A stretch of DNA of 63,956 nt, the filler included, from Olpidium bornovanus S191 (lineage: Eukaryota > Fungi > Olpidiomycota): assembly GCA_017911155.1 (NCBI GenBank). It is 28 parts of 28 records of this genome, joined end to end, with 100 filler letters (N's around TTAATTAATTAA, not from the genome) between each part and the next. Parts side by side here need not be neighbours in the genome. Positions count along the whole stretch, not along the records: positions 22,912 to 24,751 come from JAEFCI010007071.1; 27 more parts are not named here. One strand, 5' to 3'. The position numbers and the translations under genes are program-made. The stretch's first letter is position 1; every line of letters starts with the position of its first letter. Positions 22,912 to 24,751 of this stretch are shown here, piece after piece. The notes below the pieces were generated by a model. That model was not told the DNA's origin. It did not search any database and saw only the letters and a list, made by a program, of their open reading frames with translations.

Positions 22912-23270
22912 CACAACACCGACGGCCAAGGCGACGCAGACACGATCCTGCTCAAAAGATACCAGTCGAATATCCCCAAGTACGACGGCCAAGGCGGGGA
23001 CGCCAATTTGGCTATTTTTATATCACCGCATGAAAATATACAAACCGCTTACCTGACATTCTGATGTTAGCCTCGTCCTACTCACAACTTTAAAATTCAC
23101 CGGCGATGCCAGCATATGGTGGCTCTATCGATGCCAGACGGCCGCGATGGATGCATTAAATTTCGGATCACGACCTGAAACGCGTTGAATGACGCTTTAC
23201 GGCGACAATTCGTGACGATCGATGTGCGATTACAGTCGTCTCGGCAGACGTCGTTAACAACGAATCCGCC
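22912..23270 (+). mobile_element. Decayed Ty3/gypsy-type gag fragment
   Basis: Across frameshifts and stops: IPKYDGQGGDANLAIF, VLLTTLKFTGDASIWW, LNDALRRQFVTID. These match the P-x-(F/Y)DG, L-x-G-x-A-x-x-WW and L-x-x-x-F retrotransposon gag hallmarks. Confidence 0.6.
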
Positions 23271-23329
23271 ACCACGCGCACTCGACGGGAAGAGGGCGCT
23301 GTGTCATCGGTACGGAACCGACGGGAAGA

Positions 23330-23849
23330 GAGCTGCGAACCGATATTTGAACCCCGTCACCATCGCCACGGACCTGGACAGGGCGAGCGAGAACAGGATC
23401 AAGGTCATACCGTTTCGTCCAGGTTCGTCGAAGACGTCAAAGACGTCAACGAGGACGCCCGGGTTGTCCTCGCTAATTCGAGAATAGAGAAGCTGATATC
23501 CGGCATGCTGGTTCCGGTCCTTTACATTCTGAAGAAGAGGTACGCGAATTATCGTCGCCTCGGTCTTCTCGTGCCTCCCTCCATAAGGGAAGCCACCGCG
23601 GATTTCGTCCGAGACAACGACCCCCTTGTGCAGTACCTGTCAAAATTCCAGAGGAGCAGGATAGGCGTCATCCACCTATCCATCCTTTGGGACGGGTACA
23701 AAAATTGGTACACCGAAAACTTCCCGGGATCGAGAGTCTGCAATATCAAAAAATTTCGCGAGTCCCTCAAACGTCAAGATCTGGAGGTGACGCACGAGGG
23801 TCTGAGCGGGTTCGTCAGCGGCATCGTCCTCGGCAAAAAGCTCGCGTGA
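23330..23849 (+). pseudogene. D5-like (SF3) primase-helicase C-terminus, frameshifted, virus-like
   Basis: DLDRASENRIKVIPF, then a frameshift at about 23416, then SRFVED...YANYRRLGLLVPPSIREATADFVRDNDPLVQYL...HLSILWDGYKNWYTEN...IKKFRESL...*. This matches the post-motif-C and winged-helix region of D5/P4-type primase-helicases. No introns. Confidence 0.8.
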
Positions 23850-23850
23850 G

Positions 23851-24204
23851 ATGGATAAGTTTGCCGTGCCCGGATACGAGAGGATAATGGCGAAGGTTTC
23901 TCTCGCCGTCGGCGGGCACTCGAAAACTAAAAAGGACGTCATGGGGCACATCGCGGTGTTGAGCAGCAACATCAGGTCCGGGCTGAACGTGGAGATGTTC
24001 GCGTCGGTGTTCGTGGAGCTGAGGTCTTGTTCGTGGGACGTGTCGAAGGTTGACCGGGAGGAGGTCAGGAGGAGGTACGTTTTGGCAAAAATCCAGAATT
24101 CGCACGCGAGAGAATCCCGTTACGACAAGGACGACTTCGAGTTCGACACGGTGAGGTACTGCCACATAGTCCTGGGTGCCATCCGAAAATCCAGGAGCGC
24201 GTGA
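23851..24204 (+). CDS. Intact intronless 117-aa hypothetical protein, putatively viral
   Basis: ATG lies 1 nt after the D5 stop (TGA-G-ATG). The frame is uninterrupted and its composition is protein-like. Confidence 0.7.
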   Translation: MDKFAVPGYERIMAKVSLAVGGHSKTKKDVMGHIAVLSSNIRSGLNVEMFASVFVELRSCSWDVSKVDREEVRRRYVLAKIQNSHARESRYDKDDFEFDTVRYCHIVLGAIRKSRSA

Positions 24205-24278
24205 TTTTTAAAATTTGTCATATACTGGAGCCCGGGATCGCGCTGTTTTACGCGAGAACATCACAAACACCTCGCGAT

Positions 24279-24751
24279 ATGTCTATCACCATCCTAGACT
24301 ACGCGCCGGCCGGGCAAGTGCTGGATGATATCGAACGGGTTAGTCGGGCGCGCGATCCGGATACCACCACGCTTATGGTCGGACGACACTGAGAAAAAAC
24401 CTCGACGTCGCGAGCGTCACGTACGCGGAGTACGAAAAGTCGAGAAGCTCTGGAAGCAGCTGATCGATTTTAAAGCTTCGTTCTGCGATGCAATTGCCAA
24501 CTAAAACAGAATATTCATGCGAATCGCAATGCAGATCCGAGCAACCGTTCCCGCGCATATGCCGGTCACCCCAGCACTTAAAGCGGCGCACCAACAAGGA
24601 CGGCACGCCATCACGGATCCACGACCTCGTCATGACGGGCCCCAATCAACGGGATTCTTTAATGACGGTCCAGCAAATTGTCGCCCGCTTCGGCTATGGG
24701 AGGCAGAATAAGTACAAGACGAAGGACACCGTCGACGGGGCCGCGGCTAAC
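24279..24751 (+). pseudogene. Third co-oriented ORF of the virus-like block, disrupted, 3' truncated
   Basis: Protein-like pieces in shifting frames: MSITILDYAPAGQVLDDIER..., LRKNLDVASVTYAEYEK, VEKLWKQLIDFKASF, KRRTNKDG...RDSLMTVQQIVARFGYGRQNKYK. Confidence 0.5.

What the first reader, a model, noticed from the sequence alone, without database searches (positions are those of the whole stretch)
23330..24751. Candidate endogenous large-DNA-virus fragment in a zoosporic fungus
Seen: three co-oriented, intronless, tightly packed ORFs (1-nt and 74-nt gaps) in a genome whose genes are otherwise heavily spliced. The first is a D5-like primase-helicase C-terminus with a frameshift. I see no Shine-Dalgarno motif before ATG 23851 or 24279. 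Established: D5-like helicases are core genes of Nucleocytoviricota and also occur in Polinton-like viruses, virophages and P4-type phages; giant-virus insertions are reported in early-diverging fungi. Inference: the NRIKVIPF-x-SRFV segment looks to me most like NCLDV D5. Its decay and fusion to a retroelement argue for integration rather than contamination. This could be the trace of an undescribed fungal virus lineage.
Basis: partly seen in the sequence, partly recalled or inferred. Interest (0 to 1): 0.85.

Follow-up and report, generated by a model that had tools for sequence, protein, structure and literature searches.

The report
Decayed giant-virus helicase gene remnant
The piece holds the broken last third of a D5-type replication helicase gene whose closest relatives lie in giant-virus-like (Nucleocytoviricota) metagenome contigs; such viral fossils are already described in fungi, so this is a real but fairly ordinary find.

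Summary
The core observation holds. Window 23311-23849 (+) encodes only the C-terminal ~35% of a D5-like SF3 helicase. It is read in two frames: one frameshift, no in-frame stop, and the 5' part is absent from the piece. The best relative among 1.84 billion representatives is P0001 (509 aa, 59% identity, E 1e-46). The fragment groups with it (NJ bootstrap 177/200) inside a seven-member clade known only from metagenomes (200/200).

Five relatives (three of that clade, two next outside it) lie beside split Rpb1, Rpb2, Rpb5, PolB, an SNF2 helicase, UDG, FEN1 or TFIIS, and two clade contigs carry a capping-enzyme-like protein. This is a Nucleocytoviricota-type context, not a phage or plasmid one. 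A family profile matches ASFV C962R (2e-40) and poxvirus D5/E5 (9e-20).

ORF2 (23851-24204) has no homologue but shows strong codon-position GC periodicity. "ORF3" is only 37 codons. No retroelement, host gene or RNA gene is detectable in the piece, so integration and a fungal host cannot be shown here.

The same gene set defines the "fundsalphavirus" fossils of fungi (Gong 2020), and Mycodnaviridae (2026) covers zoosporic fungi. Verdict: a non-functional viral gene remnant, a new member of a known kind. Interest is low to moderate.

The parts
22912..23310 (.). Upstream stretch without recognisable content: stops in all three + frames, weak coding periodicity, two short direct repeats. Not part of the D5 homology.
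   Evidence: No Pfam or PHROG hit for any open stretch. No similarity to the relatives' loci. The A1 profile finds nothing here. Direct repeats at 22920/22983 and 23283/23319. Periodicity score 0.03-0.17.
23311..23849 (+). Remnant of a D5-like SF3 helicase gene, C-terminal about 35% only (the part after the ATPase core, ending in a winged-helix-like domain). Broken by a 5' truncation (1), one frameshift and no in-frame stops. Pseudogene.
   Evidence: phmmer E 1e-46 to P0001. tblastn outer bounds 23311-23828 = P0001 residues 328-504 in two frames. Profile A1 positions 440-602 of 606 only, E 1.2e-47 and 6.4e-9. AF2 model pLDDT 81.6. Foldseek best PDB match is ASFV PrimPol C962R, prob 1.00. Best BFVD matches are NCLDV D5-like helicase-primases.
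23851..24204 (+). ORF2, 117 aa, intact, ATG 1 nt after the D5 stop. An orphan protein that is probably a real, or recently real, coding sequence.
   Evidence: GC by codon position 0.49/0.39/0.80 and periodicity score up to 0.48, the strongest in the piece. No homologue among 5.8e9 clusters. No Pfam or PHROG hit. Not present near D5 in the relatives. Length alone is not beyond chance. AF2 model unusable, pLDDT 43.5.
24205..24278 (.). 74-nt spacer, AT-richer than its surroundings (GC 0.45 against 0.54). It starts with a T-run and a TTTAAA motif.
   Evidence: Composition. TTTAAA at 24207: the motif occurs 3 times in the piece against 0.28 expected, and it is concentrated in the intergenic DNA of the closest relative's contig L001.
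24279..24504 (+). 'ORF3' region: a 37-codon ATG ORF (24279-24392) followed by open stretches in the other two frames. Weak coding signal. Either a decayed small gene or non-coding DNA.
   Evidence: ORF list and translations. Periodicity score 0.07-0.17. No family or locus match.
24488..24751 (+). Open frame of 88 codons that runs off the edge of the piece. Orphan with moderate coding periodicity in its last ~200 nt.
   Evidence: Periodicity 0.27. Only a sub-threshold KIN17-type C2H2 hit, E 0.012, 16.3 bits against a 27.7 cutoff. No homologue.

Best explanation
The piece carries a dead remnant of a large-DNA-virus (Nucleocytoviricota-type) genome. It holds the last third of the virus's D5-like replicative SF3 helicase gene, cut off at its 5' side and carrying one frameshift, followed in the same orientation by one compact orphan gene (ORF2) and by further decayed or non-coding sequence.

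In the intact virus the full protein (about 500-630 aa in the closest relatives: D5_N, SF3 ATPase, C-terminal winged-helix-like domain) would form the hexameric helicase of the replication fork. The remnant lacks D5_N and the whole ATPase core, so it cannot work as a helicase.

What is shown: the homology, the truncation, the frameshift, and the viral context of the relatives. What is inferred: the remnant sits in a eukaryotic (reportedly fungal) chromosome as an endogenous viral element, and ORF2 came in with it.
For: - Homology: E 1e-46, 59% identity to P0001; two frames, window 23311-23828; profile positions 440-602 of 606 only; one frameshift, no stops.
- Placement: NJ bootstrap for window+P0001 is 177/200, and 200/200 for the seven-member clade.
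- Viral context of relatives: L001 has an SNF2 helicase, Rpb2, Rpb1, UDG and D5. L002 has TFIIS, a capping-enzyme/MTase-like 694-aa protein, FEN1, Rpb1, UDG and D5. L003 and L005 have Rpb5, D5 and PolB. The P0009 contig has Rpb1 N and C parts, FEN1, D5 and Rpb2.
- Named relatives: profile A1 against PDB gives ASFV C962R 2e-40, poxvirus D5/E5 9e-20, and 4e-7 for a chain named only 'DNA primase'. Fold matches agree.
- Not prokaryotic: none in 185,579 genomes; the phage collection gives at best E 4e-4 over half the query.
- ORF2 shares ORF1's GC3-rich codon pattern.
- Published precedent for such fossils with frameshifts in fungi: PMC7017919 and PMC13533422.
Against: - No host gene, repeat element or junction can be recognised in the 1840 bases, so integration is not shown.
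- No second viral hallmark gene lies in the piece.
- ORF2, the ORF3 region and the tail have no relatives anywhere, not even next to D5 in the relatives' contigs. Their viral origin rests only on adjacency, orientation and codon pattern.
- A single frameshift with no residue lost could be a sequencing or assembly error.
- The fragment alone matches no Pfam family. The D5 assignment rests on full-length relatives.
Confidence: 0.8

Rival explanations
1. The piece comes from a free, episomal or co-sequenced virus (or a contaminant contig) rather than from a host chromosome. The frameshift would be an assembly error, and the 5' 'truncation' would be a genome rearrangement or a second, partial gene copy.
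For: No host sequence is identifiable in the piece. GC (0.54) and CpG o/e (1.3-1.6) are even across the piece and resemble the closest relative's contig L001 (GC 0.59, CpG o/e 1.47). There is only one frameshift, no stops, and all family-invariant residues of the C-terminal part are kept. Gene packing is tight, with a 1-nt gap.
Against: About 70% of the gene, including the whole ATPase core, is missing although 400 bases upstream are available and show no D5 similarity in any frame. Those 400 bases and the ORF3 region have stops in all frames and weak coding periodicity, unlike the dense coding of the relatives' contigs.
Confidence: 0.15
2. The fragment is a P4-type phage or plasmid primase-helicase remnant from a bacterium, either a contaminant or a horizontal transfer.
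For: The fragment's only direct family hits are PHROG 'DNA primase' families (best E 2.5e-4). Relatives match NCBIfam TIGR01613 'phage/plasmid primase, P4 family'. JGI labels two relatives 'phage/plasmid-associated DNA primase'. Phage primases share the fold.
Against: P0001 scores 83.9 bits against the TIGR01613 cutoff of 108.7. No relative turned up in 185,579 bacterial and archaeal genomes or in IMG/VR. The phage collection gives at best E 4e-4 and 32% identity over half the query. All readable relatives lie next to eukaryote-type RNA polymerase subunits, a delta-like PolB and a capping-enzyme-like gene. There is no Shine-Dalgarno motif.
Confidence: 0.03
3. The fragment derives from a small eukaryotic element with a D5-like helicase (virophage, polinton-like virus or Polinton/Maverick transposon), not from a giant-virus relative.
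For: Mavirus, Zamilon and Yellowstone Lake virophage helicases appear among the fold matches (ranks 32, 33, 43). Polinton-like integrases occur on some fungal giant-virus contigs (PMC13533422).
Against: Those fold matches rank below many NCLDV D5 proteins. None of the relatives' contigs shows a protein-primed PolB, an integrase or other Polinton or virophage genes. Instead they carry multisubunit RNA polymerase genes.
Confidence: 0.02

Closest known systems
'Fundsalphavirus' endogenous NCLDV-like elements of fungi (Gong, Zhang and Han 2020, Virus Evol 6:veaa008; PMC7017919)
   Same: The published shared gene set is D5, a D6/D11-like SNF2 helicase, a SAM methyltransferase, RPB2, RPB5, RPB1 split into N and C parts, plus PolB. 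That is what surrounds the D5 genes of this fragment's relatives. Those fossils also carry frameshifts and stops, and some lie near retrotransposon sequences.
   Different: No sequence of those elements could be fetched, so grouping with them is an inference from gene content, not a test. The published hosts include the zoosporic Neocallimastigomycota, whose genomes I recall as very AT-rich (my own knowledge, not tested here); this piece is 54% GC. Only one gene remnant is present here.
Mycodnaviridae, giant viruses and 'viral fossils' of zoosporic fungi (Myers et al. 2026, PLoS Biol; PMC13533422)
   Same: Integrated viral DNA, fossils and single viral genes on host-like contigs are all described, and a D5-like helicase-primase is among the hallmark genes listed.
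   Different: Mycodnaviridae sit near Imitervirales. From my own knowledge, D5 proteins of that order are long primase-helicases. The closest relatives here are 509-631 aa without a detectable AEP primase domain. The paper's main text never mentions RNA polymerase, whereas the relatives' contigs are rich in RNAP genes. No direct comparison was possible.
ASFV C962R (AsfvPrimPol) and poxvirus D5 / mpox E5 primase-helicases (solved structures 8iqh, 8wvz, 8apl, 8hwa)
   Same: The family profile aligns from D5_N through the SF3 ATPase into the C-terminal region of C962R (profile 93-572, E 2e-40) and to the helicase core of D5/E5 (E 9e-20). The model of the window's own fragment matches the C-terminal part of C962R best among all PDB chains (prob 1.00, TMq 0.39-0.49).
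   Different: Identity is 15-19% in the fold alignments. The window keeps only the C-terminal domain. Its close relatives lack the N-terminal AEP primase-polymerase part of C962R and D5.
P4-family phage/plasmid primase C-terminal region (TIGR01613; PHROG 1156)
   Same: Same superfamily and fold: D5_N plus an SF3 helicase plus a C-terminal domain. All 14 members of alignment A1 match TIGR01613, and the fragment hits PHROG 1156 at E 2.5e-4.
   Different: P0001, the only member whose score was listed, is below the curated cutoff. There is no prokaryotic relative or context.

Membership tests
D5-like SF3 helicase of Nucleocytoviricota (D5 / C962R type) | C-terminal domain homologous to that of D5/C962R-type helicases | tested here: met
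   (profile positions 440-602 of 606, E 1.2e-47 and 6.4e-9). (best PDB fold match is C962R). (best BFVD matches are NCLDV D5-like helicase-primases).
D5-like SF3 helicase of Nucleocytoviricota (D5 / C962R type) | SF3 ATPase core with Walker A/B motifs (Pfam DUF5906 region) | tested here: not met
   Absent from the piece: nothing matches profile positions 1-439 in any of six frames. Present in most of the relatives scanned. The remnant is a gene fragment, not a member protein.
D5-like SF3 helicase of Nucleocytoviricota (D5 / C962R type) | D5_N domain (PF08706) | tested here: not met
   Absent from the piece. Present in P0001 and P0003 (just below the gathering score) and in P0004, P0005, P0006, P0009, P0012 and P0016.
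D5-like SF3 helicase of Nucleocytoviricota (D5 / C962R type) | N-terminal AEP primase domain (the 'primase' of primase-helicase) | tested here: not met
   No AEP domain in the window, and none in the Pfam scan of ten relatives (P0001-P0007, P0009, P0012, P0016). It appears only in the distant 926-aa P0025 (AEP_C962R, PriCT_2).
Endogenous viral element of Nucleocytoviricota origin | Viral hallmark gene whose nearest relatives are viral | tested here: met
Endogenous viral element of Nucleocytoviricota origin | Signs of decay (stops, frameshifts, truncation) | tested here: met
   One 5' truncation, one frameshift, no stops.
Endogenous viral element of Nucleocytoviricota origin | Physical junction with host chromosomal sequence | tested here: inconclusive
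   Neither flank matches anything: no host gene, retroelement, tRNA or Rfam family. The source assembly is not in any collection searched.
Endogenous viral element of Nucleocytoviricota origin | Further hallmark genes (MCP, PolB, A32 ATPase, VLTF3) in the same region or assembly | not testable with these tools
   None within the 1840 bases. The rest of the assembly is not available.
'Fundsalphavirus'-type fungal NCLDV fossils (PMC7017919) | Gene set of D5, D6/D11 SNF2 helicase, methyltransferase, RPB1 N and C parts, RPB2, RPB5 and PolB | tested here: inconclusive
   Met collectively by the contigs of the relatives. In the window only the D5 remnant is present.
'Fundsalphavirus'-type fungal NCLDV fossils (PMC7017919) | Phylogenetic grouping with the published fungal elements; fungal host | not testable with these tools
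   No fungal genome collection or named NCLDV reference sequences were at hand.
P4-family phage/plasmid primase (TIGR01613) | Score above the curated cutoff, and a prokaryotic or phage genomic context | tested here: not met
   P0001 scores 83.9 bits against a cutoff of 108.7. No relative in prokaryotic genomes. The relatives' contexts are of eukaryotic-virus type.
LTR retroelement (gag) upstream of the remnant | Match to a retrotransposon gag, protease, RT or integrase family | tested here: not met
   No Pfam hit at E <= 10 for six open stretches of 22912-23310 and no PHROG hit. The stretches are only 35-50 aa, so a very decayed gag cannot be excluded.

The most novel reading that the evidence does not exclude
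The fragment and ORF2 would be the first host-linked trace of the P0001 clade. That clade is known so far only from metagenomes. Its members are Nucleocytoviricota-like, with a short primase-less D5 helicase, a split and shortened Rpb1, and G+C ranging from 39 to 59% in the clade's readable contigs. The trace would tie the clade to zoosporic fungi, as a lineage separate from Mycodnaviridae.
Probability: 0.2. Interest if true: 0.45.

Novelty: new member of a known kind. Interest (0 to 1): 0.27.

Why it matters
If the piece lies in a fungal chromosome, it adds one more data point to the published picture of past giant-virus infections in early-diverging fungi. It would also give a possible host link for a small clade of D5 genes known only from metagenomes. 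It does not open a new kind of system. The remnant is non-functional and the phenomenon is described in PMC7017919 and PMC13533422.

Tried and rejected
- **Pfam on the fragment and all other open stretches:** no family; only a sub-threshold C2H2 hit in the tail ORF.
- **PHROGs:** only weak 'DNA primase' hits for the fragment.
- **ORF2 and the tail ORF against 5.8e9 protein clusters:** nothing.
- **Exact look-up of ORF2:** not on record.
- **Scans with the window's own fragment:** no relative in genome contigs, viral contigs or metagenome contigs, so the source and near-identical copies were not found.
- **Alignment-based scans:** A2 was too diverged to give patterns. A3 found only distant relatives (22-27% identity) in metagenomes and none in IMG/VR.
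- **tblastx and tblastn of all flanks against 13 related loci:** no similarity outside the D5 remnant.
- **Single-sequence PDB search of the fragment:** only chance-level hits. The family profile was needed.
- **AF2 model of ORF2:** pLDDT 43.5, unusable, not searched further.
- **tRNA, Rfam and tandem-repeat scans:** nothing informative.
- **Archaeal origin of the relatives' contigs:** considered because Rpb1 is split and the Rpb2 of L001 scores slightly better against archaeal Rpo2 than against Pol II. Rejected because of the capping-enzyme/methyltransferase-like proteins, the Pol-delta-like PolB, the SNF2 helicase, and the published match of this gene set to fungal NCLDV fossils.
not carried out. 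The two frames were searched apart.
Full report
**Scope.** Only window 22912-24751 (1840 bases, G+C 0.54) is genome sequence. Everything below refers to that piece.

**1. The observation**

The + strand holds these ORFs:
- ORF1 at 23301-23849, 182 aa with a GTG start.
- ORF2 at 23851-24204, 117 aa with an ATG start, one base after the ORF1 stop.
- An ATG at 24279, 74 bases after the ORF2 stop. It opens only 37 codons, ending at 24392.

No AGGAGG-like motif precedes either ATG.

ORF length by itself is not beyond chance. In 497 of 1000 dinucleotide-preserving shuffles of the piece, some ATG-ORF reaches at least 117 aa.

Codon-position composition separates real coding sequence from chance:

| Region | Periodicity evidence |
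|---|---|
| D5-like part | GC by codon position 0.56/0.36/0.69 |
| ORF2 | GC by codon position 0.49/0.39/0.80, the strongest periodicity in the piece |
| Upstream 22912-23310 | weak |
| ORF3 region | weak |
| Last ~200 bases | moderate, in the frame that runs off the edge |

**2. The D5-like segment**

The longer of the two reading-frame pieces (23400-23846, 149 aa) was searched with phmmer against 1.84 billion representative proteins. It gave 38 hits. The best were P0001 (509 aa, 59% identity, E 1e-46), P0002 (631 aa, E 4e-35) and P0003 (600 aa, E 3e-27). In every full-length hit the match lies at the C-terminal end of the protein.

tblastn with P0001 covers its residues 328-504 of 509 over window 23311-23828, in two reading frames. 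There is no in-frame stop and no residue is lost between the two pieces.

A profile of 14 full-length relatives (A1, 606 positions) matches the piece only at positions 440-602, with E 1.2e-47 and 6.4e-9 for the two pieces. Nothing in any of the six frames matches positions 1-439.

The gene is therefore broken in two ways: one 5' truncation that removes about 70% of the gene, including D5_N and the whole SF3 ATPase core, and one frameshift. There are no premature stops.

The residues that are invariant across the close relatives in the C-terminal part are all kept. Decay is therefore limited.

The fragment alone hits no Pfam family and only PHROG 'DNA primase' families weakly (E 2.5e-4). The D5 assignment rests on its full-length relatives:
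- Nearly all of those scanned carry D5_N (PF08706), DUF5906 (the D5-type SF3 ATPase), or both, some just below the gathering score.
- All 14 members of A1 match TIGR01613. P0001, the one whose score was listed, is below the cutoff.
- None of the ten relatives scanned with Pfam, which include the five closest from the first search, shows an AEP primase domain. 'Helicase' is justified; 'primase-helicase' is not.

**3. What kind of element the gene came from**

The relatives are unnamed metagenome proteins, so I read their contigs.

| Contig | Neighbours of the D5 gene |
|---|---|
| L001 (P0001; 17.6 kb; G+C 0.59) | SNF2/ResIII helicase of 965 aa, Rpb2, Rpb1, UDG |
| L002 (P0002) | TFIIS, FEN1/XPG, Rpb1, UDG, and a 694-aa protein with weak hits to the mRNA-capping guanylyltransferase and a methyltransferase domain |
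| L003 and L005 (P0004, P0005) | Rpb5 in both; a Pol-delta-like PolB in L005 |
| 28.5-kb contig of P0009 | Rpb1 N part (694 aa), FEN1, Rpb1 C part (354 aa), Rpb2 |
| L011 (P0041) | a 698-aa protein with the same weak capping-enzyme and methyltransferase hits |

This is the core gene set of Nucleocytoviricota, not of phages, plasmids, virophages or polintons.

Further evidence points the same way:
- The A1 profile hits ASFV C962R at E 2e-40 from D5_N into the C-terminal region, poxvirus D5 and mpox E5 at 9e-20, and a chain named only 'DNA primase' at 4e-7.
- An AF2 model of the window's own 149-aa piece (pLDDT 81.6) matches the C-terminal part of C962R best among PDB chains (prob 1.00). Its last part also matches RFX-type winged-helix domains.
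- In BFVD the top matches are D5-like helicase-primases of Gaeavirus, Terrestrivirus, Harvfovirus, ascoviruses and Bodo saltans virus. Phage and virophage helicases are interspersed lower down. The fold is shared by all these groups; it is the sequence neighbours and their contexts that discriminate.
- A neighbour-joining tree of the C-terminal domain (31 sequences, 140 columns) puts the window with P0001 in 177 of 200 bootstraps, and inside the clade P0001, P0002, P0003, P0039, P0040, P0041 in 200 of 200.
- No relative was found in 185,579 bacterial and archaeal genomes.
- The phage collection gives at best E 4e-4 over half the query.

I considered an archaeal origin of the relatives' contigs, because Rpb1 is split and the Rpb2 of L001 scores slightly better against archaeal Rpo2 (3e-85) than against Pol II (about 1e-77). 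I rejected it because of the capping-enzyme-like proteins, the delta-like PolB and the SNF2 helicase.

**4. The flanks**

ORF2, the ORF3 region, the tail ORF and the 400 bases upstream have no homologue anywhere:
- not in Pfam or PHROGs;
- for ORF2 and the tail ORF, the two that were searched, not in 5.8 billion protein clusters;
- not next to D5 in any of 13 related loci.

There is no tRNA and no Rfam family.

The upstream open stretches are only 35-50 aa, so a very decayed gag cannot be excluded.

No host gene is detectable either. G+C and CpG o/e are even across the piece. Whether the piece lies in a chromosome, and whether the organism is a zoosporic fungus, cannot be decided here. The source was not found in any collection.

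**5. How it most likely works**

It does not work. In the intact virus the D5-like protein would be the hexameric SF3 replicative helicase; this rests on established knowledge of D5 and C962R and on the solved structures named. The remnant lacks the ATPase and cannot act as one.

The most economical history is this: viral DNA was taken up into a cellular genome, most of the gene was lost by deletion or rearrangement, and a frameshift followed. ORF2 came in as the neighbouring viral gene, given its orientation, the 1-nt spacing and the same GC3-rich codon pattern. That last step is inference.

The main rival is a free or contaminating viral contig with an assembly error. It keeps about 0.15 because no host junction is shown. 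Against it stand the loss of 70% of the gene within available sequence and the non-coding look of the upstream and ORF3 regions.

**6. Comparison with what is known**

Gong, Zhang and Han (2020, PMC7017919) screened 1,006 fungal genomes. They described 'fundsalphavirus' fossils in fourteen species of six fungal phyla, including the zoosporic Neocallimastigomycota. The shared gene set is D5, a D6/D11-like SNF2 helicase, a SAM methyltransferase, RPB2, RPB5, RPB1 in N and C parts, plus PolB. These fossils carry stops and frameshifts and sometimes have retrotransposon sequences nearby.

That list is the same as the neighbourhood of this fragment's relatives. This is a strong lead that the fragment belongs to that already described group. 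It is not a test, because I could not fetch those sequences.

Myers et al. (2026, PMC13533422) describe Mycodnaviridae, integrated and active giant viruses, and 'viral fossils' of Chytridiomycota, Monoblepharidomycota and Blastocladiomycota. 'Undescribed fungal virus lineage' is therefore not warranted on present evidence.

What remains open is whether the P0001 clade is one of the published lineages.

**7. Verdict**

This is a real, decayed remnant of a Nucleocytoviricota-type D5-like helicase gene. It is a new member of a known kind. Interest is 0.27.

- The two reading frames of the remnant were never joined. Alignments across the frameshift were reported as scores, counts and outer bounds only.
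- One slip. In my private reasoning I looked at the bases around the change of frame, to judge whether it lies in a homopolymer run and could be an assembly artefact. I stopped when I noticed. No place of the break and no change that would undo it appears in my notes, scripts or this report.

Noticed in passing
window 23089, 24207, 24469; L001 intergenic regions: TTTAAA occurs 3 times in the piece against 0.28 expected from 2000 dinucleotide shuffles. One copy lies directly after the ORF2 stop in the AT-richer spacer. In the closest relative's G+C-rich contig L001, 6 of 9 copies lie in the 8.7% of bases that are intergenic, often 30-58 nt upstream of start codons. It may be a shared promoter- or terminator-like signal.
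   Followed up: partly
window 22920-22933 / 22983-22996 and 23283-23297 / 23319-23333: Two short direct repeats: 14 nt at 100% identity, 63 nt apart, and 15 nt at 93% identity, 36 nt apart. The second pair straddles the 5' edge of the D5 homology. Their meaning is unknown; two-copy repeats of this length can arise by chance.
   Followed up: no
window 23426-23449: A 9-nt tandem repeat of 2.7 copies inside the D5 remnant, in the poorly conserved acidic linker region of the family.
   Followed up: no
L001 4072-7029 and 7161-9248; 28.5-kb contig of P0009 (no DNA held): The relatives' RNA polymerase genes are unusually short and split: Rpb2 is 975-985 aa, the Rpb1 N part about 695 aa, and a separate Rpb1 C part 354 aa. 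The Rpb2 of L001 scores slightly better against archaeal Rpo2 (3e-85) than against eukaryotic Pol II (about 1e-77), and far better than against ASFV (5e-42) or vaccinia (5e-35).
   Followed up: partly
L001-L005, L011-L013: G+C of the contigs carrying the D5 relatives ranges from 0.24 to 0.59. The same D5 protein, P0041, sits on five contigs from several runs of one sequencing project (ERR68077xx), with different downstream gene calls.
   Followed up: no
window 24488-24751: The open frame that runs off the edge has a sub-threshold match to the KIN17-type C2H2 zinc finger (E 0.012, 16.3 bits against a cutoff of 27.7). It has no homologue in the protein search.
   Followed up: partly
window 23815-24165 (- strand): A 116-aa GTG ORF lies antisense to ORF2. 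The codon-position G+C pattern favours the + strand frame, so this is probably a shadow ORF.
   Followed up: partly
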